A DNA stretch of 64,000 nt, taken from assembly GCA_038087875.1 (NCBI GenBank), contig JAXLNO010004395.1, positions 1 through 64,000 on the forward strand. The letters are read 5' to 3'. This stretch comes from Malacoraja senta. Lineage: Eukaryota. Of this stretch, positions 1,462 through 62,249 are shown one piece after another. A model generated the notes under the pieces. That model did no database searches. It saw nothing but the letters and a program-made list of their open reading frames with translations, and was not told the origin of the DNA. The position numbers and the translations under genes are program-made. Positions within the stretch are counted from its first letter, which is position 1, and the number at the start of each line of letters is the position of its first letter.

Positions 1462-1462
1462 A

Positions 1463-24645: not shown

Positions 24646-24753
24646 CTCTCCTCTTTTTTCTCCACCAAACAATTACTGCCAAGACAATAGCCAGCAATAT
24701 CAGCACACACGCGGCAATAAGGCCTATGTGCCTGTCTTTCTTGCTATTTCCTT
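24646..24753 (-). CDS. MHC class I exon 5 (connecting peptide, transmembrane helix, basic stop-transfer)
   Basis: 108 nt, acceptor ttcttatttttcag, donor G|gtaaga. EGNSKKDRHIGLIAACVLILLAIVLAVIVWWRKKRR; phase matches alpha3. Confidence 0.88.
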
Positions 24754-25332
24754 CTGAAAAATAAGAATGCATAATTTTACAAATCAATTGCTAAGCTGTG
24801 CAGCTAAATAGATGGGCACTGTCTGAAGACTTCAGGGTGAAGAAGGGTCTCGACCCAAAATGCCACCTATTCCTTTGCTCCAGAGATGTTACCTGACCGC
24901 TGAGTTACTCCAGCATTTTGTGTCTATCTTTGGCGCTTTTCAACATATATAAATATGTTGTTTTGAATCATGGAGTTCTGCAGCATGGCAAAGGGACAAT
25001 ATATGTTCTGTACAACTCTATGATCTATGGCACCATCACAGCCACAACTTAATTCATGAAAGAAGATGAATTGAAAGCAGAAAGATTTAACCCTATATAA
25101 ACTAACATCTGTTTTGGGAAAAATGCTGGATTCCTTTCAGTAATGGCAGAACATTTAAGTAATAACAAAACAATAAAGTGCATTAACAGGGCATTAACAG
25201 GAAAATTGTAGAAAGAAAGAGATGCAGATACTGATTTACACAAAAGCTTTAGTTTAGTTTATTGTCAAGAGTACTGAGGTACAGTGAAAAGCTTTTGTTT
25301 CATGCTAACCAGTCAGTGGAAAGAATATACAT

Positions 25333-25488
25333 GATAGACACAAAATGCTGGAGTAACTCAGCGGAATAGGCAACATCTCTGGCGAACATGGACTCAGTCA
25401 GAAGGATCGTGACCCGAAACATCACCTATTCTTTTTCTCCAGAAATGCTGCCTGACCAGCTGAGTTATTCCAGCAATTTGTGTCCATC
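25333..25488. mobile_element. Fold-back short element derived from the Penelope 3' end
   Basis: Arms GATAGACACAAAATGCTGGAGTAACTCAGC / GCTGAGTTATTCCAGCAATTTGTGTCCATC enclose a degenerate hammerhead motif. Confidence 0.75.
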
Positions 25489-25953
25489 TTCAGTGTAAAC
25501 CAGCATTTGCAGTTTCTCCCTACACATGGACAGGTGACATTTCGTTTACGGACCCTTCTTCAAACTTTGTTTGAGAAATTGATTAGAATTCTTTGAAAAT
25601 GCAACAGGAACCCGTAGACAATGTATATTTGAGCAGCAGTAGTTTGCAGGTGTGCACAGCCTAAAATTTAAAAACAAAATGATGGAAAAGCAGAATAGGT
25701 AACAAAATTGGAATGAGAAACAAAAGAAATACAATATATTGTAGAGATCCAAGCGTCGTGAACAAATCAATGTTTTTTTAAGAAATACAGTTTTGGCCCA
25801 CTCGCGTTTAGTAAGGACTTGAGCAAAGTTCCCACCGTTGTAATCGGGCGCACCAGTTGACTGGCGATTAACTCATCACCAACTCCCACCAAAACCCTGT
25901 CACTCACGTGATAGTCCCAGCTCCCCTGACGAGAGTTCTAGCAATAAGTGGCC

Positions 25954-25972
25954 TGACCACCAGATGTCGCCA
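25954..25972 (+). promoter_or_regulatory. Candidate CTCF site
   Basis: TGACCACCAGATGTCGCCA differs from the CCACCAGRKGGCGC core at one position; it lies in a CpG-richer non-repeat patch. Confidence 0.3.
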
Positions 25973-27427
25973 CAATATCTGGATTTTCATAAATTATCTG
26001 ATCAAGTGATGCAAAGGCACATGGCTTATGACATTGGGGGTAATAATTAGCATGAATGGAAAAACAATTAAGAGCAAGCAGAGTCTTAAAGGAGTGTTCT
26101 GGTTGGGAAACTGCAACTGCAGGATGGGAATCAATGCAAGAAAGTGAACTACTTATCGTTAGTATTAAGAGCAGATGAAGGGACTGGTGGTGCTGTAGCC
26201 TAGATTGCTGATGATACATAGATAGGTTGGAAATTAAGTTCTGGAGTATGTCAACAGTCTTCAGAGTGAAACATCAGATTCCTTAGTTGTGCATTGTTCG
26301 AGGGAATCTTCAAAAGTGAACATTTGTGTAGGTTAGTGCAGCATACCTGGAATCAAACTACTACGATCGCTGTTTGTCAGGCAGTTATATTTGTTGTTGC
26401 TGAAGCTGTAACTTGCGTCAGGGAACTTACTTCATTAGGTTTAGTTTTATTAATGTCAGATCTTTCAAGATACAGTGCAAAGGTTTGTTTTGTATGCTAT
26501 CCAAACAAATTAGATAATACTATAGATAAATAAAAAACTCAAAAACAATAGATAGAGCAAAGAGGAGGATACATAGTACAGAATATAGTTCTCAGCATTG
26601 TAACACATCAGTTCCATGGACAATGTTCAATGTTCAATGAGGTTGAGGTGAATCGCGCATTAAACCTACATTATGGAAGGACCCTTCCGAAGCCTGGTAA
26701 CAGGTGGAAACGGGGTGTTCCTGAGTCTGGCAGTGCTTATTTTCAACTTTCAGTACCTATTGCCTGATGGGAGCAGGAAGGAGGAATGTGAGAAAGGTGT
26801 GATAAGTCTCGTTTTCCAAGGCAACCTGGTGTAGATTGGGTCAACAGTGGGAACTCTGGCCTGTGTGATGATCTTTAACTCTTTGTATATTCTTGCAGTC
26901 TTGGGCAGTGCAGTTCCCAAATCAAGATGTGATGCAACCCAACAACATGCTTTCTCTAGCGGCATCTATAGATGTTTGCTGGAGTCACCAGAGACATGAT
27001 GAATATTCTCAGTCTCCTGAGGAAGTAGAGGTGTTGGTGTGCCTCCTTGGCTATGTGGTCAGTCCATGACCGAATATTGGATAAATTCATGCCAAGGAAC
27101 ACGAAGCTCTCAATCATTTCCACTTCAGACTATTGATTCAGATTGGGGCATGTACTCCCCCAGTGCCTTGCTGTTAATCACATCATGAGGAAAGATTCAT
27201 TTTATATTTAAACATACCTTTCATGGATATCAGTTCCACCACTGAGAATCCCAACTGCTCCTTCCTTGTATATTAGTTATTTATTTACTTACTTTTAATA
27301 AATTTTCTGTTGACAAAGTCTTCTGCTCATGTGGAGAGTGGGTGCTGATTACGTGATTACTTAGAGCAACACCACTAAACAAAGAAAGTTTAAGCATCTT
27401 GGAATATGGGATGTACTACATGCGATG

Positions 27428-28467
27428 TAGCAATGTCACAAAATTTTGAGATTTAAAAAATCAAGTCTGCAATTTATCCCATCAGATAAAGCATAAAAAG
27501 AAGTTTAATTTGACACCTAATCCACTTTCATATCTTCTGTATTAAAAAAGTTTGGCCATTTTCATACTCGGAAATTAGCATCTTGTTCCCTATTGCTTTT
27601 CCATTGACTTAACACAAAAGCTGTGATCAAGGACAGTCAAAAGCCCATAACTTTCTTAAAAATTAAGAGAACTTAATGACATTTTCAGTTATTATAGATT
27701 GAAGCATTCTGAAACAAATATGAAACAATCTTACTTGGATGACCTGAAATTAAAGCATATAATTAGTTAACCCAATTGTAGCTAATTACAAAATTCAATT
27801 ACTAGATCTAAATATCTATCCATTTCTTAAGAAAAAGTTAACATTTTTAAAAAGCCTAAGTGTCCAAATAACATTCACACAAGAATTCACAATATAACAT
27901 GATTTTTAAATCTCATTGTCATTAATTTATAGGCCAAATGGAAGGAATTTAGTGTTTAATTCCTGTAAATTAATGGCCATTTAAATCATCTTGCGAGTGG
28001 GATTTTGTGGAACGCGCTGGTTTGGAACGCTGCGGTTGCACTGAATTAAACCCCAATATCGGCAGGAAAAATACTGCCGGTTGGTATATTTAAATAATCA
28101 CATTTTCGCAACTTGACATTTTTATTAAAGGCATCCTAAGAAGCAAGTTTATATGAAAAAATAAATGGTGTACCTTGCCTTGTCCCGTGCGTGAAATCCG
28201 TCCCCGTTGTCGGCGTTTACGGCATTTGAAGATGATTTTAATTTTACTCCACCAATTAAATTATAAAGCGCTAATATTAATAAACTTAATAAAACGCAGT
28301 CAAAGCAATTTTTCTTCATCAACTATTTAGCCTGTTCAAGATCGTTTAGAACAGGCTGCCGAAATATCGCATTTTAAACCCGCCCCCCTCTCAAAGGCGC
28401 CAAAGTCGCGCACACGGGCAGTGACAGAACTGCAGCGCCGCTGAAGGTAAGTTTTGTAACATACCTA
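27428..28467 (-). mobile_element. Non-autonomous DNA transposon, ~1.04 kb, TAG..CTA termini (copy 1)
   Basis: TIRs TAGCAATGTCACAAAA / TTTTGTAACATACCTA with GATG on both sides. Homologous along its length to 48708-49747 in the opposite orientation. Confidence 0.8.
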
Positions 28468-28542
28468 GATGTAGTCACAATGATTAAAATGGAAACAACA
28501 GAAGATAATGATTATCTATGAAAGAATATTTAACGTTCTTAC

Positions 28543-28809
28543 CCCAGATGATGGTCTTCCCACCGGGCAGGCTGCTGTGATCGACATGACAGGAATACTG
28601 TTTCCCATCATACGGATCATACTCAAGGACAGACCTTAGATGATATGTTCCATCGTTGTTGGGTATGACCCCAGAAGATTTGGTCTCAGAGACATGTTGA
28701 CCATTCTGCAACCAGCTGACTTTGATGGCCGGTGGGTAAAATCCAAACACAGTGCAGTACAGGACTGAATGATCATCAGGGCGGGCAGCGAGAGTGACCT
28801 CAGGGGAAA
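28543..28809 (-). CDS. MHC class I exon 4 (alpha3 Ig C1-set domain)
   Basis: 267 nt, acceptor ctgtcttgtag, donor G|gtaaga. SPEVTL...LYCTVFGFYPPAIKVSW...PNNDGTY...YSCHVDHSSLP. Confidence 0.95.
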
Positions 28810-31800
28810 CTACAAGACAGTAAGTTGGTTATTTTCATCTTCAGTAAAACGTGCAGTCACCCATCACAAAATATTCTTCAATCTACTACAACCACCAAGT
28901 TACTGTCCGCATCTGCCCCATTTTGCCTCTTTCGTCCCATCATCCAAACACGTGGTTTAAAAGGGATCGCACGCTCCCTGTTAAGACAGTACACAAGAAA
29001 GTTTGGAAGTACGTACCATTAAATTCAGGAACAGCTTCTTCCCCGCTGTTATTGGACTACTGAATGGTTCTCATGTAAGATAAGATGTTGCCCTGATCTT
29101 CCAACCAATCTCATTGTGATCCTTGCTACTCTTTTTGATCTGCACTTTCTCTGCAACTGTAATGCTATGATATTGTAACCCGATATTCTGCACTCTGAAT
29201 ATTTTTGCTCTTTGCACTGATCTACTTGTGGATGGCTTGATTGCACATGTGAAGTATGATCTGATTGGATAACACACAGACAAACTTTTGACTATATCTC
29301 AGTTCACGTGACAATAATAAACTAATACCAACAGTAAATCTTTTCACTAGGGCACATTATTGACAATAATGAATAATTGACAAGTTATGAAATGAGGGCC
29401 AATTGGGGAGGGGACAAGCTTAAAATTGGCAGTATTTTCACTCCTCTTCAATAAGAGATAAAAGAGACCAGTCATTTGTTTACAAAATCTCTTTTTGCAG
29501 AGTGTGGTCATTCTCTGGCGCCAGAGATTTGTGAAGACAAAATCATTGGAAGCATTTAATATGGCGGTAGTTAAACTTTTGAAAGATTGGAGAATTGAGT
29601 GCAATGAGGAACTGGCACCGAACAGGAGTTGATGCCTGAGGAACGACAGCCATGGTCATATTGAATGGTGGGCAGGTTAGAGGACCAAATGGCTTACTTG
29701 ATAACTGAGGAGAAAATCAGGCTTCTGAATGATCGTTCCATAAGCTAGGGTACTGTCCAATTGACCACTACCCCATTACAGACAGTGGACTTTGTTTATG
29801 GAACTATGCAGGAAGGAACTGTAGATGCTGTTATAAACCGCAGATAGACACAAAATGCTAGAGTAACTCAACGGGTCAGGCAGCATCTCTGGAGAGAAGG
29901 AATGTGTCACGTCTTGTGTCAAAACCCTTATCTAATGGAACTGGTGTGCTACATTGCTGAGAACTATATGCCACACTCTGTACCTTCCCCTTTGCTCTAC
30001 CTTCAGTTCTTGAGTTGACTTGATCATATATATGTATGTTGTTATCTCATCCAATTGGATAGCATGCAACTACCTGGAAAGTTGCTGCCTTACAGTACCA
30101 CAGACCAAAGTTCAATCCTGACAATGGGTGCTGTCTATATAGAGTTCATATATTCTCTCTGTGACCATGTGAGTTATCTCCGGGTGCTACAGTTCCGTCA
30201 CATTCAAAGACGTGCAGGTTTGTAAGTTTTTTGGCTTCTGTAAATTGTCCCTAGTGTGTAGGATAGAACTAATATTTGGGTGGTCGTTAGTCAGCACAGG
30301 TTCAGTGGGCCAAAAGGCCTATTTCCATGCTGTACCTCGAAACTAAACGTGACAATAATAATCCGAAACTTATCCCTGTGCCTATCTGTAGATTAGTGTC
30401 ACTCATACTGTGGCTCCACCCACAGGCTTATTAGACAGCTCTCTCTCTCTCTCTCTCTCTGGTAGACTGGTAGTAAGCATGCTGAGAAGAAAGCACCTTG
30501 TGTTTCCTCTGCAATGTTACTAATAACCACTATGTGTGAGTTTGATCATTCTTCCAACACTATCTCTTGTGTTGTTACGTCTCTGGAACAAAGTGGTAGC
30601 TGCGCTTAACTTTGTTGTAGCATAACTGTTTATGCTGAACAATTCATGAAAAAAGTCTAAAAAGGATAAAGAACAAGTGATTCCAGCATGTTGAAAGATA
30701 ATTGGGACTGATACATAATGGGGTGGCACTGCGACACAGTTCAGTGATGAGGGTTTGATCACAATCTTGAAACAGAAAAACTTAAACTAAGGCAGGCGCC
30801 TCTACTTCATCAATCCAGTGCTGTTATGACACTGGGCCTTAACATGAGAAAATTACAAATTGCGTATTTCCTTAGGGCAAAATCAGACTTCTCAGAGACT
30901 TGAAAGCTGCAAGATAGTACTGGAATGTGGTGGATCTCTGCGTGCTGTTCCAGAAGAGGACGAATTGTACTTATGTACAGTATGACTTGACTGGGGAGAA
31001 TGCAGAACAACCATTTCACTGCAGATAGACACAAAAAGCTGGAGTAACTCAGCGGGACAGGCAGCATCTCTGGAGAGAAGGGACGGGGTGTCCAGCATCT
31101 GCTGTTCCATCCAAACCATTTCACTGCATCTCTGCATGCATGAAACTAAACAGAGTTATATAAAATGCAGCACATACTGCAGTACTCAAGTAGGTCAGGC
31201 TGTCATGATTTTGCTGGTGGATAACTTTACTGTAATTTAAAAAACACAAAAATGTGCAGGTGTAACTCAGTGGTTCAGGCAGCATCTGGAAGACATGGTT
31301 ATGTAATCTTTCAGCTTGGGATCCTGCTTCATACTTCTTGCATCTGTTCTTTCTGTCTTCAACTTAACAGTTGAAAGGACCAGTTTGTTTATCGACAGGG
31401 AATGCAACTCGTTGAATGTGGAATTGAGTTTGAAAGGCTGCAACATGTCCAGACAGAAGCTGAGTTGTTGGTCCTCAAGGTTACTTTCACCCTTGTTATC
31501 CTAGTGTAAGAGGTACAGATGGATGGATGATGGTGGGTATTGAATGGAGAATTAGAGTGGCAGGAATTAGGAATCTTAGAAAGTCCCATGGATTGAATGC
31601 AGGTTCTCCAGAAAGCAGCCATTCTATTTGTTTCATTGATGCAATGTGGAAGATTACGTCATGAAAACCAAATGCAGTAGATTTGACTGGAAGTCCAAGT
31701 GTTTCACGTTGTTTCACTTTGAAGAACTACCTGGGTCTATGGACAGTGGTAAATGGATAGATGTTGCATGCACCAAGACAGGAAAGTAGAGGAAAGTTGT

Positions 31801-32061
31801 GGGCATAGTAGACAGACCAGGGAGTGAAAAAGGGAATGACTACTTCAAAATATAGAATGGGGATCAGGGCAGGAGCGGAGGGAGAAATGGATTGACTAAT
31901 TGAATCAGATTTAAACTGGGAGGAAGTATTCAACATGGAGGCTGGAGGAGTGGAAAACATATCCCTGCCCTGTCCAATGAGAATATATAGAACATAGAAC
32001 AGTACAAGAACAGGACTTTCAGCCTGCAATGTCCATGTGGAACAGGATACCAAGTTAAACT

Positions 32062-32355
32062 GAGGCAACACAGAGGCACAGTGATAGAGTGGCTGTCTTA
32101 CAGCATTAGAGACCCGGGTTCGATCCTGACTAGAGTGCTGTCTGGACGGAGTTTGTACGTTCTCTCTGTCACCCTGTGGGTTTTCTCTGGGGGCTCCGGT
32201 TTCCTCCCAAATACAAAAGACATGCAGGTTAATTGGCTTCTGTAAATTGTCCCTAGCTTGTAGGACAGAAATAGTGAATGGGCAATTGCTGGTCAGTGCA
32301 GACTCAGTGGCCCAAAGGTGTTGTTTCCATACTCTATCTCTAAACTAAACCAAAA
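32062..32355 (+). mobile_element. HE1/V-SINE-like SINE
   Basis: GGGTTCGATCC B-box, same body as 23712-24005, (CTAAA)n tail. Confidence 0.8.
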
Positions 32356-32925
32356 CTAATCTCCACTGCCTGCATGTGATCCATATCCTTGTATTCCCTG
32401 CACATTCACAAGCCTGTCCAAAACTTTCTTAAGCACCATTATCATGTCATCCTCTACCACCACTCCTGGTAGCGCATTCTAGGTATCAAGCTCTCTCTGT
32501 GCAAAAAAACACTTGACCTGCACATCTCGTGTAAATTTTGCCCTTTCGAAGCTTAACGCTGTGCTCTTTTGAGATGTGTGATAGACATGCAATCCCATTA
32601 GGGGCTGTCAACTGTGGTCAAGAAAATCCATGGTTAACTAATATGAAAGACATCAATTACACTTTCTCCCTGTCAAACAGGGATGTAATGCTGAGGTTCT
32701 ATAAGGCACCAATCAAGCCACATTTGGAGCATTGTGAGCAATTTTGGGCACCATATTTGAGGAAGGATGTGCTGGCTCTGGAGAGGATCCAGAGGAGGTG
32801 TCCAAGAATGATCCCAGGAATGAATGGGTTAACATATGATGACCATTTGATGGCAGTGGGCCTGTACTCGCTGGAGTTTAGAAGAATAAGGGGGGACCTC
32901 ATTGAATCATACAAAATAGTGAAAG

Positions 32926-34242: not shown

Positions 34243-34881
34243 AAATAGTGAAAGGCTTGGATAGATGTGGATGTGGAGAGGATGTCTCCAATGGTGGGAG
34301 AGTCTACGACGAGAGGTCATAGTCTCAATATTAAAGGACATTCCTTTAGGAAAGAGATGAGGAGGAATTTATTTTGTCAGAGGGTGGTGATTCTGTGGAA
34401 TTATTTGCCACAGAAGGCTGTGGAGTCCGTCAATGGATATTTTTAATTCTTGATTAGTATGCAGGTCAGGGGTTATGGGGAGAAGGCAGGAGAATGGGGT
34501 TAGGAGGGAGAGATAGATCAGCCATGATTGACTGGCGAAGTCGACTTGATGGGCCGAATGTTCTAATGCTGCAGCCATCACTTATGACCTTATGACTCAG
34601 TTGGCTTCCTCCATGTGCTCCAGTTTTGACCAATATACCAAAGACGTGCCAGTGAGTTAGTTGGACATTGCAAATTATCCGTCGTGGAGCTGAATGCAAG
34701 GAGAATCCAAGGGAGCTGAGTGCAAGTTGTGAGAGAGAGCTGTGGAAGTTTGTCGACATTGCGTAGAAAACTAGCATAGAATCAATGGGCCGAATGACCT
34801 TTCCCTCTGTCATGATTGGGTCAGAGATAATATTACTCATTGCCTACCATTGCAAAACAACATCCTTTGTTCTGAACTCAC

Positions 34882-35157
34882 CTTTTCTGGTCAGGAATGT
34901 CTTTCCAATTGCATAGTATGTAAGCCATAGATCCACACAGTCATGTTCTAACAAGCTCTTGAAATAACGGTTCATTTTTTCATTCTTGTCCCATTTCTCT
35001 TTGAAGGGCTCAGCTATTGGATCATGCACCGTCCACTTTAGCTTGTCCTTATCAAAACTAAATGCATAACTTCCATCAAAAGCCAACTTCAATATCCCTA
35101 CAGTGGGACTGTGATCGTTCACCTCACAACCAAACTGTCCTTGAACGTAGTGATAAT
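34882..35157 (-). CDS. MHC class I exon 3 (alpha2 domain)
   Basis: 276 nt, acceptor tttttatttcag, donor G|gtgagt. HYVQGQFGC...LAFDG...KEKWD...EHDCVDLWLTYY...G contains the C101-C164 pair. Confidence 0.95.
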
Positions 35158-35377
35158 CTGAAATAAAAATAAAAATAATTATTTGATTAATTGTTATGAC
35201 TGGGTAATTTCTGAACACCAGGGTCCAAGTCATTTATATATGTCACAACTAGCAAGGGTCACAGCACAGATCCCTGCAGAACTCTACTTGTCACTGAACT
35301 ACAGCCTGAATATTTGTCTTTCCGTGCAACTGTAGAGACCATATTATTGTATGGGTGTGAGGCATGGACTCTCACTC

Positions 35378-35844
35378 CAGCACTGTCCGCTGCTCTACAT
35401 CGGTGAGACCAAGCGCAGGCTTGGCAATCGTTTCGCCGAACACCTCCGCTCGGTTCGCAACAACGAACCTCATCTCCCGGTGGATCAGCACTTCAACTCC
35501 CCCCTCCCATTCCAAATCCGACCTTTCTGCCCTCGGTCTCCTCCATGGCCAGAGTGAGGACCACCGTAAATTGGAGGAGCAGCACCTCATATTTCGCTTG
35601 GGCAGTTTACACCCCAGCGGTATGAACATTGACTTCCCTAATTTCAGGTAGTCCTTACTTTCCCCTCCCCTTCTCAGCTCTCCCTCAGCCCACTGGCTCC
35701 ACCTTTTCCTTTCTTCTTCCTGCGCCCCCCACCCCCACCCCCACATCAGTCTGAAGAAGGGTTTCGGCCCGAAACGTTGCCCATTTCCTTCGCTCCATAG
35801 ATGCTGCCTCACCTGCTGAGTTTCTCCAGCACTTTTATCTACCT
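35378..35844 (+). mobile_element. Penelope-like element 3' part (GIY-YIG endonuclease) with a terminal hammerhead motif
   Basis: CPLLYIGETKRRLGNRFAEHLRSV...KLEEQHLIFRLGSLHPSGMNIDF, then a pyrimidine-rich spacer, CTGAAGA...GAAACGTT and the short terminal repeat. Confidence 0.9.
35751..35778 (+). ncRNA. Minimal type-I hammerhead ribozyme motif
   Basis: CUGAAGA-A-[GGGUU UC GGCCC]-GAAAC-GUU: catalytic core, stem II hairpin, and loop-less palindromic stem III (AACGUU), at the 3' end of a Penelope ORF. Confidence 0.7.
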
Positions 35845-37972
35845 ATGCATGTCCCTGTCCATGTGTCTTTTAAATATTGTTATTGTACCTGCCGCAACTC
35901 CATTCTCTGGCAGGTCATTCCATATGCTGACCACTCTCTGAGCACAAAGTTTGCCCCCAAGTTCCAATTAAATCTTCCCCCTCTCACATTAAACCCATGT
36001 CCTCTAGTTATTTTATTCCCCTTCTCTGGGTAAAAGGCTCTGGGCATACACTCTATCAATTCCCCTCATGATTTTAAGCACCCCTATATGATCACCCCTC
36101 AGCCTCCTGTGCTCCATGGAATAAAGCCCTGGCTTGCCCAATCTCTCCCTCTTGTTCACACCCTTGAGCCCCGACAATATGCTCATAAATCTCATAAACA
36201 TAACAATGTTGCAGATAATATGTGCACCATAAATAATGCAAATAAGAAAAAATATTTTTGAAGGCAATATGATTCAATAAACATGGTTCTATGAATCAGA
36301 TAATAATCTAATAAATGTCATTCACATGTATTCACATATAATTTGAAAATAATAATAAATATATTGCAAGATGTGGAAATTGATAGAAATTATGCCCAGT
36401 GCATAATATTTTGATGTATTGTTCCCTGTTTGTACCCTCACCCTGTTTTAGTCCAGTTAAAGATTAATAATATAATTTATTTAATGTGTAACCAAAGAGG
36501 TAACAAAAAGCAATCTTTTCAGCAATAATTAATCATGAATGAATGATACTTTATTGTGACATGTGACAAGTCACAGTGAAATTCTTTGTTTTGTAAACCC
36601 AACGTATGTCAAGATTCTTCACATAAAGGGCACCGACAAAGTTAGAAAGTCTCCCACACCAGGTCCTCCTTTGTCCCCCACCTCACGATTGTCCCCTCAT
36701 GCCTAGTCCTGCTTTGTTCAATGGTACACTACGAATGTCATTGAATTAACACAGTAATGGTGATAGGACTTATTGATTTACAATATAAAACGTGTCCAAT
36801 TGCAAATTATATGGATATACAAGTGTGGTGCAGACGGATTTGGACAGCCTACTTTACAATTGGTGCCCAAGATAATTTAGAGATATAGCACGAAAACAGC
36901 CCTTAGAGTCCACAGTGACCAGTGATCCCCTTTGGCATACAGGCTTGGAGTGTGGGAGGAAACCGGGGCACCCGGGGAAATCCCACGCAGGTCACGGGGA
37001 GTACGTACAAACTCTGTACAGACAGCACCTGAGGCCAGGATCAACCCTGGGTCTCTGGCACTACGGCAGCATCACTACGGCTGAACCACAATGACATTTA
37101 GGTTATCCTTTAAATATTTCACACAACCTTTCTTTCAACATTTGTCAATAAAAGTAAAAACAATTGCTGAGGTACGCAAGGGATTTTAACCATTCAAAAA
37201 GCCGCCAACATTTCAATGATTTGTAAAATGCTGGAAGCACAGCAAGTTCAACAGAACCTATGGAAAGATAAACAAAATTAATGCTTCAGAATTGTGAGAA
37301 TGTGTAAGTTACAGACAGGAGTGGGAGGCATGGTTGGACATAGGGAGTATCACTGATAAGGTAATTACAGGTTTCCATGGTGATAAACTGACTATGAAGC
37401 CATCAGACAATGGCATTTTTGGTTTTTATTTCACATATGCAGCATCTGCAGTTCTTAGGTTAGTGACTCAGCATGGAAACGGGCCATTCTGCCCACCAAT
37501 TCCATGCCAACCATCGATCATCTTTCACACTAGTTCTATGTTATCCCAAAATGGACACAAAATGCTGGAGTAAGTCAGGGAAAACACTCTGTCTGAGGAA
37601 GGTCTTGACCTGAAAAGTCATCCATTCCTTGTATCCAGAGATGCTGCCTGTCCCGCTGAGTTACTCCAGCACATTGTGCCTATCTTTGCTGTAAACCAGC
37701 ATCTTCAGTTCCTTCCTACACATCTATGTAATCCCACTTCCTCACCCATTCTCCGCACACAAGAGTAATTTACAGAGCCCAATTAACCTACAAACTCTCT
37801 CGTTTTCAAGATATGGGACGAAACCGGAGCACCTGGAGGAAATATCTGTGGTCACAGGGAGAACGTGTAGTCAGGATCAAACCTGGGTCTCTGGCACAGC
37901 GAGAAATTTCTTTGAGATGTTTTTTTATGAACATTGATCACACTCCAAATGTAGTGAAATGAATGAACTAAC

Positions 37973-38234
37973 TTGCTGTTTCGTTCTGCCTCCGCATCCA
38001 TTCATCGACTTGCCCTTTGATGATTCCATGGAAACCAGTTTCAAGAGACAGTATTTGTTACCCAGTAATTCCTGTCAAATGCAGCCGCCATCCATTTCTG
38101 TCTTGGAACTGTAATGACCATGTTTTTGTCATAATACTGTATCTCACAACCGTCCAGAACACCCACGACACTATATTCTGGTAGATGAGTACTCCCGTGG
38201 TTCAGGGTGTAGTAATAGATCAGTGTGTGAGGCC
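37973..38234 (-). CDS. MHC class I exon 2 (alpha1 domain), frameshifted near 38041-38050
   Basis: Acceptor ttttatttgtgtctag|GG CCT CAC. Reads GPHTLIYYYTLNHGSTHLPEYSVVGVLDGCEIQYYDKNMVITVPRQKWMAAAFDRNYWVTNTV, then TCT TGA. The shifted frame continues LETGFHGIIKGQVDEWMRRQNETA to the donor A|gttagt. Confidence 0.9.
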
Positions 38235-38602
38235 CTAGACACAAATAAAATAATACAATTATTCTCAAGTAATAGAAATTTCTATGGATAGGAAAGGTTT
38301 GGAGGGAAATCGGCAAAACACCAATTGGATTTACATTGCACTAAACATGATATCCTTTATCCTGTATCTATAGATTGTGAACGGCTTCATTGTAATGTAG
38401 TCTTTTCACTGACTGGATAGCACACAAGAAACATTGCCACTGTAAAACAGTACACGTGACATTAATAATAAATTAAACTAAGCTAAAATATAGATAGATG
38501 GGTCAAGGGTAGATGGGGCATCTTGGCTGGCATAGATAAGCTGGGCTGAAGGGCCTGTTTCTATGCTGTATATGATTCTAAATGTCAAGCTTACTTAGAT
38601 TA

Positions 38603-49747: not shown

Positions 49748-49754
49748 CTATTAT

Positions 49755-51518: not shown

Positions 51519-51792
51519 TTAGTTTAATTTAGAGATACAGTGCAGAAACAGGCCACCAAAATCCTCGCCGACCAGCGATCCCCGCACACTATCACTATTC
51601 TATGCACACTTGGGACAATTTAGAATTTTACTAAGCCAATTGGTATGTCATTGGAATGTGGGAGGAATCCGGAGGAAACCTGCACCTGTCATGGGAAGTA
51701 TGTACAAACTCCATGCAGGCAGAAACCGTAGTCAGGATCAAACCCGGGTCCCTTGCGCTGTAAGGCTGCAGCTCTGCCGCTGCACCACCGTG
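51519..51792 (-). mobile_element. HE1/V-SINE-like SINE
   Basis: Reverse complement of the SINE consensus. Confidence 0.75.
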
Positions 51793-53054: not shown

Positions 53055-53330
53055 TAGGTTTCCTAAAATTGGCGAGTTCAATATTCACACCATCAGGTTG
53101 AAAGCCACCCAAGAAGAATATTAGGGGCTGTTTGCATGTGACCTCACACTGGCAATGGAGGAGACCCAAGACAGAAAGGTCAATATGGCAATGGGAAAGG
53201 AAGTTCAAATGGTTAGCAACCAGGAGATCCAGTGCAGAAGTCCATGGCAGATCCAGTGCATATTTTTGGCGAAATGGTCGTGGAGTCAATGCCTGGTCTC
53301 GTCGATATACAGGAGGCCACATTGGGAACA
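53055..53330 (-). mobile_element. Penelope GIY-YIG remnant
   Basis: PPVYRRDQA / LSVLGLLHCQ / LGGFQPDGVNIELANF fragments in shifted frames. Confidence 0.75.
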
Positions 53331-56300
53331 CCGGATGCAATAGAACAGTTTAGAGAAGGTGTACATGAACCTTTTTCCAGCATCTGCAGTTCCTTCTTTA
53401 ACACCTCTTGTCTCACCTAGAAGGGCTGCTATGGTCCCTCGAGGCAGACCACAGAGGAGGTACAGGAACAGATGTTACATCCGCAGTTGCAGGGGAGATT
53501 ACCTGGGATGCGATGGTTTGGTGTGGGAAGTGATGAGAATTTTAGGTAACCTAACCCCCCCATTTTTTCCCCTCCCCTGTGCCCCATCTGGACTGGCATC
53601 TATTTCTGCCCTCCCCCGTCACCTTCACATTCCTCTATTCTCACAATTCACCATTCTTTAATTCCTTTTGTCTTTTCATCTCTGGCCTTTGTCCAATCAT
53701 TTGCCTGTCGGAAAATCCTCTCTGCAACATTTTAGTTTAGTTTATTGTTACGTGTACAGAGGTACAGTGAAAAGCTTTTGTTGCCTGCTAACCAGTCAGC
53801 GTAAAGACAATACATGATTACAAACTAACCATTTACAATGTAGAGATACATGATGAGGAAATAACATTTAGTGCACGGTAAAGCCAGTAAAGTCCGATCA
53901 AAGAAAGTCCGAGGGTCACCAATGAGGCAGATAGTAGTTCAGGACTGCTCTCTCATTTTGGTATCTATCACCTATCATCTGCCATACTTTGTTCTGCCCC
54001 TCCTCTCTTCCAGCTTTATTTACCCCCACAATCAGTTTGATGAATGGTCCTGACCCAAAACCTTAGCATCCCACGCTCTCCAGTAATGCTGCCCGTCCCA
54101 CTGAGTTATTCCAACACTGTGTCTTTTTTTGTTAACCAGCATCTTCAGTTCCTCCTTTCTTCTTTCTCCTCCTTCCCAGTCCTGAAGGGTCTCTGGCCTG
54201 AAACATTAGCTCTGCTTTCCTGCCTACAGATGAGGCCTGACCTACTGCATATTGCCAGTGTGTTCGGTATTTTACTAAAGTCAATTTTAATAATACTATT
54301 CCTGCATGCATTAATGAATTACTATCCTTTTCAACTATGTTCAAGGTATGAACATTTCAGCATGCAATTCTACCGTAAAAATATCATAAAAATACCAAAC
54401 AACAGTGTTATTCAAACATGTAGTTAATATCGAGACATGTTGGAATCTTGAGCAATGAAATACTGGAGGAACTCAGTGAGTCAGGCAGCATCTGTGGCTG
54501 GAATGGACAGGTAATGTTTTGAGTCAGGACCCGTCTTCAGTAGTTTAAATAGTTTTGAATCTAGCTACTTGCAATAAATCAGTAATTTTAGTGGGTTTTA
54601 AGGTTAGTTTAGAGTTATAGCGGAAACAGGCCTTTCGGCCCACTGAGTCCATGCTGACCATTGATCTCCCATTCACTCTAGTTATTCCACTTTCTCGTCC
54701 ACTCGTTCCATACAACCTCGGTCTATCCTTGACCGGACTTTGCTGGCTTCACCTTGCACTAAACATTATTCCTTTATCATGTGTCTCTACATTGTAAATG
54801 CATTGATTGTAATCATGTATTGTCTTTCTACTGACTGGTTAGTAAGCAACAAAAAGCTTTTCACTGTACCTCGGTACATGTGACAATAAATTAAACTGAA
54901 CCTAGGCAGTACAAAAATGTCGTCATGTGTTGGCGCAGACAAAGTTACAAAGTACCGAACAGTCCTATCCACTGCCTGTTGCCGCACATGGCAGCAGACC
55001 CCATCCCCACCAGTTCCCCCTTCATTCTTGGTGGCGCCCCCATCCCCACAGTTCCCCCTTTGTTCTCGTCCCCCTCAATGGGACAGCCTCCCTGTGCTGA
55101 ATGCCCTACTTCTACAATGTTCTAAGTATAAGATTAGATTAAGCAATGCTCACTGTTGGACTTTGTACCTGCAAACCTTTATTACTTTGTTGGTCTCTTT
55201 GAATACAAACATTCTTGGGTGTTCTTGTCTGAACAAACTAAAATGTGTTGGTTTCTCTGTAACCTTTAAATTCAGGTATCATGCTCACCAATCTTTTTTA
55301 GCAGATGCAGCATGGAAACAGGCCTTTCTGCCCACTGAGTCTGCACTGACCATCAATCACCCATACACTAGTTCTATGTTTTCCCTGTTTCACATCCTAC
55401 ACACTCTGGGCAATTTACAGCGGCCAATAAACCTACAAACACACACGTCTTTGGAACGTGGGAGGAAACAATAGACAATAGAGAATAGACAATAGGTGCA
55501 GGAGGAGGCCATTTGGCCCTTCGAGCCAGCACCGCCATTCAATGTGATCATGGCTGATCATCCCCAATCAGTACCCCGTTCCTGCCTTCTTGTCATATCC
55601 CCTGACTCCGCTATCTTTAAGAGGCCCATCTAGCTCTCTCTTGAAAGTATCCAGAGAACCGGCCTCCACTGCCCTCTGAGCACCCAGAGGAAAGCCGAGC
55701 GGTCACAGGGAGAACGTATCAACTCCATACAAACAGAACTCATTGTTGGGATCCTTCTTGTGTCTGTGTAGGAAGGCACTGCAGATGCTGGCTTACACCA
55801 AAGATAGAGACAAAATACTGGAGTAACGCAGTGGAACAGGCAGCATCTATGGATAAAAGGAATGTATCTTCTGGTACCCCACTCGTTATATATTAATTTA
55901 TTGTAATTGGAGCAGTCTGCAAAACTCTCCATAGACGAGACAAGTGTTTATGTGGATTGGCTACCATTAAACTCTAGTCCCCTGCAATGAAATGCAGATT
56001 CAGCATTTTACAGATCAACACTTTAAGGGCCCCGTTTACAATGATATGTGCATCCCATCATTTAGAATGCCCCTTCACCTACTCTTTTGAAGCCTTCTCC
56101 ACACATATAGTCACAGAGACACACAAACAGAACCTTCAGCCAACAGTCCATTCTGACCATGAAGCACTCATTCCATACCATTCCATCCCACCATGGATCT
56201 ACAGGAGGTGCTGCCTCAGAAAGACAGCTAATATCATCAGAGACCCACACCACCCTGGCCATACTCTCAGGGCCAGCCACCCTGGACCAGGAATTCGCCC

Positions 56301-59300
56301 GGAAGATCTGGCCCATCCATCATGGACCGAGTTCTTGCTCGCTGTGGACCGTGGATGGAGGACCCACCTGGAAGGCCCAGCTCGCCCGCCCAGAGTGGAA
56401 GGAGTCAGATGGATGGCTTATAGGCAGACAGGCTGCGGGAGGGAATGGACTGCCTCAACAGTGGAGTGGGTGCTGGAGGCCCTACAGCAGCCTGGGGCTT
56501 GGCTGTTCCAGGCGCTGCTCCAAGAGGCCGGGCACATGGACCAGTTGCTCCCTGCAGCAGTAGAGGACACCACAGCTTCGCTTGGACAGGTCAACCCTGC
56601 AACAACACCAGGACAATGGGCCTCATGGTCAGGCCAAGAACCCTCACTTACAACAACTGGGATGTGAAAATGGCACCAAAAACTGGCGACACTGTATACT
56701 GTCTCAGCGTACTACTGCTATACACTTGTACTGTATCTGAGATGCTTATCTAAGACGTATCTAAGGGCTTATATATAGTGATACCTGTACTAAACTGTAT
56801 ACAAAAATGAATTTCACTGTACCTCAGTACATGCCACAAATAAAATACCGTTGAACCAATCTACTGCCTCTGAGGTTAGAGAGCCTGAGAACTGTTAGCT
56901 CCAGATTTAAGAGCAGCTTTTTTTCTCATGAGCAGCAGGCATTTAAACACTGCACAACACTAACCACAACCTTACCTCAACAACTCTGATCTGTGATGGA
57001 CTTTATTTTGGTTGCAGTAAGGACGTTTTGTTTTTCCACTGTTATGGTCTGGTTACCTAGTATAACTAATATTAATTTATTTTACCATTGATTGTTGTAT
57101 ATTTAATATGTGTATAAGAATTTCATTGTTCCATTGCCAGTACAGATGACAATTAAACTCTTGCTCTTGACCAACCCATTCTTATTCTCTGCAAATTCCC
57201 ATCATCTCTCTCCAGATTCTATCACTTACCTACAAATGACAGTCAATTTACATTGAAGAAACAAGGAACTACAAATGTTGGTTCACAAAGAGACGCAAAG
57301 TGCTGGAGCACCTTAGTGGGTCCGGCAGCATCCCTGGAGATCACGGATATGTGATGATGGATAGATGTTTCGGGTCAAGACCCCTTCTTCACTTTGGGGA
57401 AGGGTGTTTACCCTAAATGTCATCTAGCCACGTTCTCCGGAGATGCTGCCTGACCAGCTGAGTTACTCCAGCACTTAGCCATATACACAAAATGCTGGAA
57501 TAACTCAGTGGGACAGGCAGCATCTCTAGAGAGAAGGAATGGGTGATGTTTCAGATTGAGGCCCTTCTTCAGACTTTGTCATCATTGTGCTAACTTGCTC
57601 CATCCCATTCACCCATCATCTTTCTGATTGAATAATATTCAGATTTTAAACTCTGATCATTGTATTTAAATATGTAAGACCAACAGCTCTTTCATTCAAA
57701 GCAAATCTTTCAATCATTTGTTCTTATATCTCTCTATATCACCCCCTGTATCTCTCGTTTCCCTTTCCCCTGACTATCAGTCTGAAGAATGGTCTCGACC
57801 TGAAACGCTACCTATTCCTTTTCTCCAGAGTCGCTGTCGGACCCGCTGAGTTACTCCAGCTTTTTGTGTCTATCTTCGGTTTAAACCAGCATCTGCAGTT
57901 CCTTCCGACGCAGCTCCTCCCTCGGCATGCATACAGTCCATACAATTTCACAGTTGAGGTTAGCGTTGTGTAGCGTTCAAGTGCACGATAGTTGTTGGGA
58001 AGAAGCTATTTTTGAACCTGGAGGTCATGGTTTTCAAACACCTATACTTTCTTCCCCATGGTGGGAGGTAATGAAAGCGTGGCCAGGGGGATGATGTTGC
58101 CTTCCTTTTTGAGGCAGCGTCTCGTGTGGATCCCTTCGATGGTGGTGAGGTCAGAACCCACGATGAACCGGGCAGTATAACTTCCTGATTATTCACAAAT
58201 TTAAGTATTTCATCTAAAGAGCAGGCCTAAGTCATAGAATTGCTCTCTAAATATCCCTTCCTTTAAGATGCACCTTAAATGTTTATTTTGCTAATTGTCA
58301 TGTCATGCCATTATACTGCTCGAAGTAAAATGTTACAGAATAATATTCTTACGAATCTCATTGAAGCATTTTCCTACATTGGAACTGCTATAAATGTTAT
58401 TCTTTATATCTATGCCTGTTTCCCCTTTCACCAAATTAGATTATTACCATCAAAGGAGAATGTCATTGTTTTGTTTGGCTCTGGAGATGCGTCCTGGAAT
58501 GTGATCATTAAAATCTTCCCGTATATTGAACCCTGAACTACACTAAACTCAGCTATGATTAATGAACAAAATAAAGTGTTGGAGTAACTCAGCAGATCAG
58601 GCAGCATGGATAGGTAAAGTGTCGAGTCGGACCCTGTAGACCTATGGAGGACTGTCTTTGGTTAAACTAAGCATTTGCGGTGTATTTGCACATGTATTGG
58701 GATTATCAATTAACTGAATTTTTAGTGTTATCTATTTGTATTGTCTTACAGGTCTGCTACATGAATGTCATTGTTTTGTAGTCAGCACATATGACAATTG
58801 AACATTCTATACTCTCTTTCCTTCTGGACTCTCTTGTGGAGTGGGATCAAACCTAACATCAGCAAAATGGTGCCATTCATCCTTTGTTCCCAATCTCTGA
58901 TATTCTATAAGATCATAACCGATCCTCTAGCAGACCACCATTTTTCCGAATTCTGGATTCCTTTTGTATCCAAGCATCTTCCTATCCCTGCCTCAAGCAT
59001 TTGATTGACTGAATGCCCACAGCCTTCTTGGACAGAGAATTTGAAAGACTAATTACCCTCTGGGTGAAAACATTTCATCTCATTACTGCACTGAATTCAA
59101 TGATATTTTATTGTCACATGCACCTAGGTACAGTGAAATGCTTCGTTTCGCATACAACGGTAAAATCATATAGCAGACCTAACCTAGGCAATACACAAGT
59201 GTCACCATTGTTTTGGTGCCATAAGAATGTCTGAACCCTTATTTTTAAACTGTGAATGTTGGTTCCAGACACACCAGTCTGGGGAGAAATAAAAAGATCA

Positions 59301-59369
59301 TCCCTCATGTTCTGAACTTTGACTCACTTCATAAGTCAAAGGTGCAGAATTTGGTTGTTCAGCCCATCG

Positions 59370-60660
59370 AGCTTACTCCACAATTTAATCATGGCTGACC
59401 TATCGTTCCCTTTCAATGCCGTTCTCCTGTCATCTCCCTGTGACCTTTGACACTCTTACAAATCGGGCGGCATTTTCTGTTTTTGTATTCCAGTCCTCTT
59501 GATATAAATCACCTTCCTGACTACCGATTCAATTTGCAAATTAACCTTTTGGGAGTCCTGCACCAACACTCCCATGTCACTGTGTGCCTCCGATTTCTGG
59601 ATTCTCTCTCCATTTGTAAAATAATCTACGCCTTTATTCTTATTACCAAAATGCACGTCTCCACACTTTGCTATACTGGATTTCATCTGCCACGTCTCTG
59701 CCCACTCTCCTAACCTGTACACGTTCACATTACAGGAGTAGAATTAGGCCATTCGGCCCATCGAGTCTACACCACCATTCCATTATGGCTGATCTGTGCC
59801 TCCTAATCCCATTTTCCTGCCTTCTCCCCATGATAACCCGTTCTAATCAAGAATTTGTCGATCTCTGCCTTAAAAATATCCACCAACTTGGCCTCCACAG
59901 CCCTCTGTGGCAATGAGTTCCACAGATTAACTACCCTCTGACTAAAGAAATTCCTCCTCACCTCTTTTCTAAAAGAGCACCCTTTAATTCTGAGGCTATG
60001 ACCTCTGGTCCTAGACTCACCCACCAGTGGAAACATCCTTTCCACATCCACTCTATCTTTGCCTTTCATTATTCTGTAAGTTTCAATGAGGTTCCCCCTT
60101 CAACCTTCTCAACTCCAACGAGTAGAGGCCCAGTGCTGTCAAACTATCATCATATGCTAACCCACTCATTCATGGAATTATTCTTGTAAACAACCTCTGA
60201 ACCAGAGCCAGCACATCCTTCCTCAGATAGGGGGCCCAAATTTGCACACTGCAAACGTGGCCTGACCAGCGCTTTTGAAGCCTCAGAATGACATTTCTGT
60301 TTTTGTATTCCAGTCCTCTTGATATAAATCACCTTCCTGACTACCGATTCAATTTGCAAATTAACCTTTTTGGGAGTCCTGCACCAACACTCCCATGTCA
60401 CTGTGTGCCTCCGATTTCTGGATTCTCCCTCCATTTGTAAAATAATCTACGCCTTTATTCTTATTACCAAATGCATGTCTCCCACACTTTGCTATACTGA
60501 ATTTCATCTGCCACTTCTCTGCCCACTCTCCTAACCCGAACAAGTCCTTCTGCAAAGTCCTTGCTTCCTCTGCACTGCCTGCCCCTCCACCTATTTTAGC
60601 ATCATCTGCAAACTTGGCCACAAAACATTCAATCCTCTTATCCAAATCATTAATAAACCA
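59370..60660 (-). mobile_element. Patchwork of CR1 RT/3' fragments, including a local ~240-bp duplication
   Basis: FADDAKIGG and FFSQRVVNLWNSLP remnants; 59472-59715 is nearly identical to 60293-60516. Confidence 0.8.
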
Positions 60661-60819
60661 TGTAAACATGACGACCGCACGTTTGGAGCTAAGAGTTGTC
60701 ACTCAATAACAAAACCACAGTGTGTGCTAATCGTTTATTGATTTTGCATTGTACTAGTGCCTCACTCTCTTCCCACATTTGACCATAAACATGAACCTGT
60801 CAAACAATGCACTTTGTGT

Positions 60820-61745
60820 AAGAAAGAACTGCAGATGCTGGTTTAACTCAAAGGTAGACACAAAATGCTGGAGTAACTCAGCAGGCAGGCAGCATCTCTG
60901 GAGAGAAGGAATGCGTGACCTATCGGGTCGAGACCCTTCTTCAGACTGATTTCAGGGGAGTTGACGGGACAAAGATAGAATGTAGTTGAAGACACTAAGA
61001 CTAGTGGGAGAACTGGGAAGGGGAGGGGATAGAGAGGGAACGCAAGGGATATTTAAAGTTAGAGAAGTCAATGTTCATACCGCTGGGGTGTAAACTACCC
61101 AAGCAAAATATGAGGTGCTGTTCCTCCAATTTGCACTGGGCCTCACTCTGACCATGGAGGAGGCCCAGGACAGAAAGGTCAGATTGGAAATGGGAGGGGA
61201 AGTTGAAGTGCTGAGCAACCAGGAGATCAGGTAGGTTAAGATGGACAGAGCGGAGTAGTTCAGTGAAATGATTGCCGAGCCTGTGCTTGGCCTCACTGAT
61301 GTAGAGAAGTTGACACCTGCAACTGCGGATACAGTAGATGAGGTTGGAGGAGGTGCAAGTGAACCTCTGCCTCACCTGGAAAGACTGTTTGGGTCCTTGG
61401 ATGGAGTCGAGAGGGGAGGGAAAGGGACATGTGTTGCATCTCCTGCGGTTGCAGGGGAAAGTACCTGGGGAGGGGGTGGTTTGGGTGGAAAAGGACGAGT
61501 TGACCAGGGAATTTCGGAGGGAACGGTCTCCACGGAAAGCAGAAAGAGGTGGAGATGGGAAGATGTGGCCAGTATTGGGATCCTTTTGGAGGTGGCAAAA
61601 ATGAGGGAGGATCATATGCTGTGCGATGGCTGATGGGGTGGAAGGTGAGGACAAGGGGGACTCTGTCCTTGGTACGAATGTGGGGGAAGGGAGAGCAAGA
61701 GCGGAGCAGCGAGGAAACCCTAGTGAGTGCCTCGCTCCTGTTTGT
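60820..61745 (-). mobile_element. Penelope-like element (RT-to-GIY-YIG linker, GIY-YIG domain, 3' terminal repeat)
   Basis: HLQKDPNTGHIFPSPPLSAFR, CNRRRCNTC, SNLIYCI, YISEAKHRLG...MNIDFSNF. The 3' end carries CTGAAGAAGGGTCTCGACCCGATAGGTC and the short terminal repeat. Confidence 0.9.
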
Positions 61746-61815
61746 TTTACACGAGTTAAAATCAGTTTAAACCAATATCTGCAGTTCCTTCTTCCACAAA
61801 GGAAACGGGGCATTG

Positions 61816-61981
61816 TGCAAATCAAGGCAGAAATTCCAGTCTGGATTGTACTGAAACAGTGGAGATTAAACCCTTTTAACGTCCGCATGAACCATGAACC
61901 AGACTATCATGCGGACCTTAAAAGGGTTTAATCTCCACTGTTTCAGTACAATCCAGACTGGAATTTCTGCTTTGATTTGCA
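61816..61981. repeat. Near-perfect 166-bp palindrome (75-bp arms, 16-nt loop)
   Basis: TGCAAATCAAGGCAG...GTCCGCATGA / TCATGCGGAC...CTGCTTTGATTTGCA; only two mismatches, one of them a G:T. Confidence 0.95.
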
Positions 61982-61988
61982 GAATTTG

Positions 61989-62026
61989 ATACACATTCAG
62001 CGAGGGTTTCCTCGCTGAATGTGTAT
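61989..62026. repeat. Perfect 17-bp-stem hairpin
   Basis: ATACACATTCAGCGAGG-GTTT-CCTCGCTGAATGTGTAT. Confidence 0.9.
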
Positions 62027-62123
62027 TGCGCGCTTTTTTAAACTCAGTCGCCTCCGGTCAAGATTGAGATAAAGCCAAGACGCTTTTAGCCAGTAGCGAA
62101 TAAAATGAGAGTCATTAACTTAC

Positions 62124-62175
62124 CTGCTTGAGCCCCTTGTACGCGGAAGAAACTCAACAAGATGAACAGAATCAT
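62124..62175 (-). CDS. MHC class I exon 1 (signal peptide MILFILLSFFRVQGAQA-G)
   Basis: ATG at 62175-62173, a hydrophobic core and an A-x-A cleavage motif. It ends GCA G|gtaagt (perfect donor, phase 1), which completes Gly1 with the GG opening the alpha1 exon. An in-frame upstream ATG at 62196 would add MRDVVRE. An XY promoter module lies directly upstream. Confidence 0.85.
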
Positions 62176-62249
62176 TTCACGCACAACGTCTCGCATCAAC
62201 AGCAGCAACTGAGCCAAACTTCACCAACATCAAAGCAGGATCTCATCAT

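What the first reader, a model, noticed from the sequence alone, without database searches (positions are those of the whole stretch)
24646..62196. Hidden 38-kb MHC class I gene of a divergent non-classical type, broken by one base in alpha1
Seen in sequence: five exons join in phase 1 with canonical splice sites to give leader-alpha1-alpha2-alpha3-TM. The ORF track shows only fragments and misses the leader and TM exons. The only lesion is in alpha1 (GTC TCT TGA AAC, 38050-38038). Removing 1 nt restores W60 to N86 at exactly 26 residues, the canonical spacing, giving ...YWVTNTVLETGFHGIIKGQVDEWMRRQNET. Adding 2 nt in the CT micro-repeat also restores the frame. All other exons, splice sites and the promoter look intact. 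Established: cartilaginous fish have classical UAA plus several non-classical lineages (UBA, UCA, UDA, UEA and others). Inference: this is a very young null allele or an assembly indel in a functional non-classical gene. I cannot assign the lineage without a search.
Basis: partly seen in the sequence, partly recalled or inferred. Interest (0 to 1): 0.8.

Follow-up and report, generated by a model that had tools for sequence, protein, structure and literature searches.

The report
Skate UGA class I gene, frameshifted
This is a complete copy of UGA, an already described CD1-like non-classical MHC class I gene of sharks and rays, here in a skate; one extra T in the alpha1 exon breaks its reading frame, so it is either a very young dead copy or an assembly slip, not a new kind of gene.

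Summary
The gene is larger than reported. A sixth coding exon (14437-14397, tail DYQNIQPKQNVHC with a YxxI motif) and a long 3'UTR lie 10 kb downstream. Coding therefore spans 62196-14397 (48 kb) and the transcript about 62273-8349.

The lineage is known. The protein is 89-92% identical to annotated skate genes (Amblyraja, Rhinoraja, Leucoraja). It nests with strong support in an elasmobranch-wide clade that holds PDB 9CH4, "shark nonclassical MHC class I, UGA".

A spliced transcript contig from another skate matches all six exons exactly at the predicted junctions, including the leader exon 24 kb upstream.

The lesion is one extra T (TCTTGA against TCTGA, 38044/38043). It is absent from the Amblyraja and Rhinoraja genomic loci, from the transcript, and from contigs of three public runs of two related organisms.

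No run of the source individual was available, so real mutation and assembly error remain unresolved.

Earlier notes of this scan report other UGA copies on other pieces of this genome, some broken.

Verdict: an ordinary new member of a known family. Interest is low.

The parts
62124..62273 (-). Exon 1. It holds the 5'UTR (at least to 62273) and the leader; the first ATG is at 62196-62194 and a second Met lies seven codons downstream. The donor is CAG|gtaagt.
   Evidence: Translation. The leader is 21/25 identical to Amblyraja XP_032898133. Transcript contig L001 nt 1-154 aligns to 62273-62123 at 92% and then jumps to exon 2.
62197..62375 (-). Conserved proximal upstream region (5'UTR and presumed core promoter).
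   Evidence: blastn gives 92% to Amblyraja L002 (62197-62324) and 85% to Rhinoraja L003 (62202-62375) directly upstream of their exon 1. Function was not tested.
37973..38234 (-). Exon 2, the alpha1 domain. It is 262 nt, against 261 nt in the genomic orthologs.
   Evidence: Pfam MHC_I. 9CH4 matches both halves, in two different frames. The Amblyraja and Rhinoraja exons are 261 nt.
38041..38044 (-). The lesion. One extra T (TT at 38044/38043 where relatives have a single T) creates an in-frame TGA at 38043-38041. It would truncate the product after mature residue 63.
   Evidence: read laying reports 'left out 1' at 38043 in all contig depth of X1, X2 and X10. Nucleotide alignments to L001, L002 and L003 agree.
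34882..35157 (-). Exon 3, the alpha2 domain (both Cys of the alpha2 disulphide pair kept). It is intact.
   Evidence: Pfam MHC_I E=4e-13. 92% identical to Leucoraja P0001. L001 block 417-690.
28543..28809 (-). Exon 4, the alpha3 Ig C1-set domain. It is intact.
   Evidence: Pfam C1-set E=4e-20. L001 block 689-957.
24646..24753 (-). Exon 5, the connecting peptide, transmembrane segment and RKKRR stop-transfer.
   Evidence: L001 block 957-1065.
14397..14437 (-). It encodes the cytoplasmic tail (D)YQNIQPKQNVHC plus the stop, and carries a YxxI sorting-type motif.
   Evidence: tblastn with Amblyraja and Leucoraja proteins. Sequence with cag acceptor and TAA. L001 block from nt 1064. Y-x-x-[IV] is kept in all complete orthologous tails read.
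8349..14396 (-). 3'UTR of exon 6, broken up in the window by insertions.
   Evidence: L001 nt 1064-3455 aligns in blocks 14439-14157, 14158-13432, 12798-12453 and 9112-8349 at 80-86%.

Best explanation
The window holds one complete six-exon copy of the skate UGA gene. UGA is a non-classical, CD1-like MHC class I lineage shared by sharks, rays and skates.

An intact UGA heavy chain has a leader, an alpha1/alpha2 groove, an Ig-like alpha3 domain, a TM segment and a short tail with a YxxI endosomal-sorting-type motif. The literature reports that such molecules bind lipids.

In this copy a single T has been inserted in the alpha1 exon (38044/38043). Translation would stop after 63 mature residues, and the mRNA would be expected to undergo nonsense-mediated decay. 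As assembled, the copy is therefore null.

I judge it somewhat more likely than not that the insertion is real, meaning a very young pseudogene or null allele within a low-copy, birth-and-death gene family.
- Shown: gene identity, exon structure, the nature and position of the lesion, and its absence from relatives.
- Inferred: that the extra base exists in the animal, and that an intact copy works like the crystallised shark UGA.
For: Identity:
- PDB 9CH4 matches every domain far above all other class I chains (E 2e-34 for alpha2, against 2e-12 for the next chain). Its title is 'shark nonclassical MHC CLASS I, UGA'.
- 9CH4 aligns along its full length to the zebra-shark member of the same clade (E 7e-170, about 88% identity by my count).
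- The tree places the window in the skate clade (SH-aLRT 100), inside the batoid clade (100), inside the elasmobranch clade (99).
- Identity is 91.8% to Amblyraja, 90.1% to Rhinoraja and 89.1% to Leucoraja.

Structure:
- The spliced transcript contig L001 breaks exactly at all five predicted junctions.
- Amblyraja (78 kb) and Rhinoraja (31 kb) have the same six exons.

Lesion:
- One letter is absent at 38043 in X1, X2 and X10, in L001 and in L002/L003.

In favour of a real mutation:
- A close relative's contigs carry a different frame-breaking change, 2 nt left out at 35006 in alpha2. Broken UGA copies therefore exist in read-derived data.
- Earlier scan notes list further broken UGA copies on other pieces of this genome (unchecked).
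- A T to TT change is not the long-homopolymer context I would expect for a long-read indel error. This rests on my own knowledge and was not tested.
Against: - No sequencing run holds the window's own sequence; the best share of words was 0.53-0.63. The extra T has therefore never been seen outside this assembly.
- Everything else about the gene looks functional. There are 0 departures at 72 invariant columns, all splice sites are canonical, the upstream region is conserved and the terminal branch is short (0.027).
- Private substitutions (3 synonymous, 9 non-synonymous) are too few to show relaxed constraint.
- A single isolated indel in an otherwise perfect gene is also what an assembly error looks like.
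Confidence: 0.55

Rival explanations
1. The extra T is an assembly or consensus error. In the animal this is an intact, functional UGA gene encoding a 341-aa heavy chain.
For: It is the only lesion in 1026 coding nucleotides. All 72 ortholog-invariant residues are kept. Splice sites and upstream sequence are conserved. Every relative examined lacks the base. The window also differs privately at 38050, 7 nt away, which might mark a locally poor consensus.
Against: The sequence context (T to TT after a short CT repeat) is not a long homopolymer. The 38050 difference is a synonymous ACG to ACT change, and a second difference that close is not unusual given the window's overall divergence from organism A (my rough estimate: 1-2%). 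Related sequences do carry genuine frame-breaking changes. No read evidence is available either way.
Confidence: 0.4
2. The gene represents a new, undescribed non-classical class I lineage of cartilaginous fish.
For: It is only about 35% identical to a classical-type shark class I sequence over alpha1-alpha2 (65 of 186 aligned columns). Public annotation gives it only generic names such as 'F10 alpha chain-like'.
Against: It nests inside a clade of 16 elasmobranch proteins that follows the species tree. That clade includes the crystallised shark UGA. UGA is named in a 2025 review as a CD1-like, single- or low-copy lineage of sharks and rays (PMC12562908).
Confidence: 0.02
3. The shift is bypassed in vivo, by programmed frameshifting or editing, so the assembled sequence still yields full-length protein.
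For: None beyond the fact that the downstream frame is fully open.
Against: No ortholog has the shift. I did not look for a slippery site or stimulatory structure. Such mechanisms are, to my knowledge, unknown for MHC genes.
Confidence: 0.01

Closest known systems
Shark UGA (PDB 9CH4, 'Crystal structure of shark nonclassical MHC CLASS I, UGA', released 2026-03-18)
   Same: Same lineage. All three extracellular domains match 9CH4 far better than any other solved class I chain. The W-to-N spacing in alpha1 is the same. The same motifs are present (DGCE, VPRQ.WMA, GFHGIIKGQ.DEW, DPYDGKQY.CH).
   Different: This is the skate member; its Amblyraja ortholog shows 54% identity to 9CH4 over 251 structurally aligned residues. 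It is broken by one extra T in alpha1. Ligand binding was not examined here.
Annotated skate orthologs: Amblyraja radiata XP_032898133.1, Leucoraja erinacea XP_055521885.1 and XP_055486429.1, Rhinoraja longicauda (P0164)
   Same: 89-92% protein identity. The length of 341 aa is shared with Amblyraja and Leucoraja. The six-exon layout with very large introns was checked in Amblyraja and Rhinoraja genomic DNA. The leader and the YQNI/YQTI tail are shared.
   Different: Those genes have a 261-nt alpha1 exon and an open frame. Intron lengths differ: intron 1 is 24 kb here, 32 kb in Amblyraja and 15 kb in Rhinoraja.
Mammalian and avian CD1
   Same: Both are non-classical class I molecules with a short tail bearing a YxxI/V sorting-type motif. 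UGA is reported as lipid-binding and CD1-like (PMC12562908; PMC10751288, says the same for UFA).
   Different: There is no sequence-level orthology. CD1 chains are not among the top sequence matches, and chicken CD1 appears only as one of many class I folds at Z about 15. Five of the peptide-terminus residues of classical class I are still present here.
Classical shark class I (UAA; PDB 6LUP)
   Same: Same domain architecture, disulphide cysteines and N86 glycosylation sequon. Y7, Y59, R84, K146, W147 and Y171 equivalents are kept.
   Different: Only about 35% identity over alpha1-alpha2. T143 becomes F and Y159 becomes L. 6LUP scores E 2e-8 on alpha2, against 2e-34 for 9CH4.

Membership tests
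UGA lineage of elasmobranch non-classical MHC class I | Groups phylogenetically with the named UGA reference (9CH4) and apart from other class I lineages. | tested here: met
   The tree gives a 17-row clade at SH-aLRT 99, with the window inside skates (100). 9CH4 aligns full-length to the clade's Stegostoma member at E 7e-170. The 9CH4 title names UGA. Named UDA, UEA and UFA references were not available for the tree.
UGA lineage of elasmobranch non-classical MHC class I | Conserved gene structure: leader, alpha1, alpha2, alpha3, TM and a separate short tail exon, all in phase 1. | tested here: met
   Six blocks of transcript L001 end at the predicted junctions. The same exons are found in Amblyraja and Rhinoraja genomic DNA.
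UGA lineage of elasmobranch non-classical MHC class I | Short cytoplasmic tail with a Y-x-x-[I/V] motif. | tested here: met
   The window has DYQNIQPKQNVHC. The motif is kept in all complete orthologous tails read.
UGA lineage of elasmobranch non-classical MHC class I | Open reading frame encoding a full heavy chain. | tested here: not met
   One extra T at 38044/38043 gives TGA at 38043-38041. The copy belongs to the lineage by descent but is not a functional gene as assembled.
UGA lineage of elasmobranch non-classical MHC class I | Lipid ligand in a hydrophobic groove (CD1-like). | not testable with these tools
   Reported only as a personal communication in PMC12562908. My AlphaFold model of the Amblyraja ortholog was too poor in alpha1 (pLDDT below 50 for residues 39-90) to judge the groove.
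UGA lineage of elasmobranch non-classical MHC class I | Linkage to the MHC class Ib cluster. | not testable with these tools
   The window holds no other recognisable gene. Earlier scan notes mention other class I-like modules 33-38 kb beyond the window end (unchecked).
Classical (peptide-presenting) MHC class I | Full set of conserved residues that bind the peptide termini (Y7, Y59, Y/R84, T143, K146, W147, Y159, Y171). | tested here: not met
   Pairwise alignment to a classical-type shark sequence (P0004) shows T143 replaced by F and Y159 replaced by L, with the others kept. P0004's classical status is my inference from its sequence motifs.

The most novel reading that the evidence does not exclude
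If the extra T is real, and the other UGA copies that the scan noted in this genome are also truly broken, this skate (individual or species) may lack any working UGA. That would be a natural knockout of the CD1-like lipid-presenting molecule in a cartilaginous fish, and could show whether the system is dispensable.
Probability: 0.07. Interest if true: 0.5.

Novelty: new member of a known kind. Interest (0 to 1): 0.2.

Why it matters
It matters little beyond annotation. The locus gives a full gene model (six exons, 48 kb of coding span, a long 3'UTR) for a skate UGA copy that gene predictors would probably miss because of the frameshift and the very long introns. It adds a data point on turnover in the UGA family. 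Only a finding that every UGA copy in this species is dead would be of wider interest, for the evolution of lipid antigen presentation.

Tried and rejected
- Searching papers for the PDB code '9CH4' returned only unrelated papers.
- The primary UGA/UFA paper and the two Almeida J Immunol papers are not held.
- Supplements of PMC10751288 held none of four sequence motifs searched, taken from the window's protein and its orthologs. Named UDA, UEA and UFA references could therefore not be put in the tree.
- No sequencing run holds the window's exact sequence, and no RNA run was on record.
- The AlphaFold model of the Amblyraja ortholog was mediocre (pLDDT 63). I used it only to retrieve PDB titles.
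- Pairwise dN/dS against the Leucoraja-type transcript (0.40) and private-change counts (3 synonymous, 9 non-synonymous) have no power to date the lesion.
- A GPR139-like gene is fused to UGA in some Leucoraja isoform models. It is absent from the window.
Full report
**Observation.** They give the leader (62196-62124), alpha1 (38234-37973), alpha2 (35157-34882), alpha3 (28809-28543) and the TM segment (24753-24646). All junctions are phase 1 with GT..AG borders. Pfam recognises MHC_I on alpha1 and alpha2 and C1-set on alpha3. The alpha1 exon is 262 nt. Its frame meets TGA at 38043-38041, and the remainder of the exon is open one frame over. Nothing else in the coding sequence is broken. The window holds no second class I gene.

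Skate orthologs end in a 13-residue tail after RKKRR. tblastn places that tail at 14438-14400. The sequence there shows a cag acceptor, phase 1, DYQNIQPKQNVHC and TAA. A 3455-nt spliced transcript contig from another skate (L001, run SRR11241640) aligns to the window in six blocks. The block ends coincide with every predicted junction:
- 62273-62123
- 38236-37973
- 35155-34882
- 28811-28543
- 24754-24646
- 14439 onward, with the 3'UTR traceable to about 8349

It also extends the gene to 48 kb of coding span and about 54 kb of transcript. The Amblyraja radiata gene (78 kb) and the Rhinoraja longicauda gene (31 kb) have the same six exons. The 130-180 bp upstream of the ATG are conserved with both.

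**Which lineage.**
- Each exon finds one PDB chain, 9ch4_A, far above every other class I molecule. For alpha2 the E-value is 2e-34, against 2e-12 for the next chain.
- The title of that entry is 'Crystal structure of shark nonclassical MHC CLASS I, UGA'.
- An exhaustive HMMER search with alpha2 and a full-length search with the Amblyraja ortholog recover one protein group. It is present in skates, sawfish, manta, stingray and seven shark genera.
- 9CH4 aligns full-length to the zebra-shark member at E 7e-170, about 88% identity by my count.
- In a maximum-likelihood tree of 53 class I proteins the window's product lies inside the skate clade (SH-aLRT 100), inside batoids (100), inside this elasmobranch clade (99). 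Its terminal branch is short, at 0.027.
- Identity is 91.8% to Amblyraja, 90.1% to Rhinoraja and 89.1% to Leucoraja.
[quoted passage not shown] It reports that crystal structure and mass spectrometry suggest lipid binding (PMC12562908; see also PMC10751288).

The gene is therefore a skate UGA copy, not a new lineage. I reached this before consulting the scan's earlier notes, which say the same of other UGA copies in this genome.

**The lesion.** The Amblyraja and Rhinoraja genomic alpha1 exons are 261 nt, and 9CH4 has exactly two residues between the T and the E flanking the break, where the window has 7 nt. Contigs of three public runs were laid on 34700-38400. Two runs are of organism A, which differs from the window at a scattering of sites (my rough estimate about 2%), and one is of organism G (38 other letters in an 804-nt contig). 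All three leave out one letter at 38043, in all of their depth. All three also read C instead of A at 38050. Nucleotide alignments with the transcript and with the Amblyraja and Rhinoraja genes agree: relatives have ...ACG/ACA xTx xCx GAA..., while the window has ACT GTC TCT T GAA. The lesion is thus a single inserted T (TT for T). The intact reading is NTVSETGFHG, not NTVLETGFHG.

**Real or artefact.** This could not be settled. No indexed run holds the window's own sequence. The best shares were 0.53-0.63, which fits the differences listed above.

For an artefact:
- The gene is otherwise flawless. There are 0 departures at 72 columns invariant among 15 orthologs, which is as good as the intact skate genes used as controls.
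- All signals are canonical.

For a real mutation:
- Organism A's contigs carry a different frame-breaking change in the alpha2 exon. Two letters are left out at 35006, in all depth of X1 and about a fifth of X2. Broken UGA sequences therefore occur in read-derived data of close relatives.
- Earlier notes of this scan describe other UGA copies on other pieces of this genome with a 2-base deletion, a dead splice site or a frameshift. I could not check these.

Rate tests have no power: dN/dS is 0.40 against the Leucoraja-type transcript, and there are 3 synonymous and 9 non-synonymous private changes. I put a real, very recent lesion at about 0.55 and an assembly error at about 0.4.

**Mechanism.** An intact copy would give a 341-aa type I membrane protein. 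It would have a class I groove that keeps the Y7, Y59, R84, K146, W147 and Y171 equivalents but replaces T143 with F and Y159 with L. It would also have the N86 sequon (NET), a C1-set alpha3 that presumably pairs with beta2-microglobulin, and a tail whose YQNI fits the YxxΦ endosomal sorting pattern. Y-x-x-[I/V] is conserved in all complete orthologous tails read. By analogy with the crystallised shark UGA and CD1, it would sample lipids in endosomes and display them. This is inference from the literature, not tested here. As assembled, translation ends after mature residue 63. The premature stop lies in exon 2 of 6 and should trigger nonsense-mediated decay.

**Verdict.** The gene belongs to a known, structurally solved lineage with annotated orthologs in related skates, and the scan has already met other copies of it in this genome. 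It is a new member of a known kind, of low interest unless all copies prove to be dead.

Noticed in passing
window 35005-35007 (alpha2 exon), in runs X1 and X2: Contigs of the closest related organism leave out 2 letters here. This holds for all depth in X1 and for 1321 of 5912 in X2. It would break the alpha2 frame of that copy, while the same runs lack the window's alpha1 insertion. It may correspond to the '2-base deletion' UGA copy that earlier notes report on another piece of this genome.
   Followed up: partly
window 62249-62194 (minus strand): An upstream ORF (MMRSCFDVGEVWLSCCC*) ends in a TGA that overlaps the first ATG of the gene (TGATG). A near-identical uORF is present in the other skate's transcript L001. 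Rhinoraja lacks that first ATG and must start at the second Met, so the real start may be MILF...
   Followed up: partly
window 35320-35940, 36932-37055, 37552-37923 (intron 2): Summed contig depth reaches 1e5-1e7 in all four runs, so these are high-copy transposon fragments. The first overlaps the Penelope-like element with a hammerhead noted by another finding (s1-141158).
   Followed up: no
window 20860-20994: A run of 135 N lies inside intron 5, between the TM exon and the tail exon. I left it untouched.
   Followed up: no
P0016 (Leucoraja erinacea XP_055486430.1): This protein is the sister lineage to the UGA clade (SH-aLRT 99). It is encoded on the same 127-kb contig as, and numbered consecutively with, a Leucoraja UGA copy. 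It is possibly UFA, the other CD1-like lineage. It has no counterpart in this window.
   Followed up: partly
Leucoraja erinacea LOC129716032 (P0152, P0153, P0155, P0169): NCBI isoform models fuse the UGA ectodomain to a GPR139-like 7TM receptor. This is probably read-through annotation of neighbouring genes. No GPR139-like sequence is in this window.
   Followed up: partly
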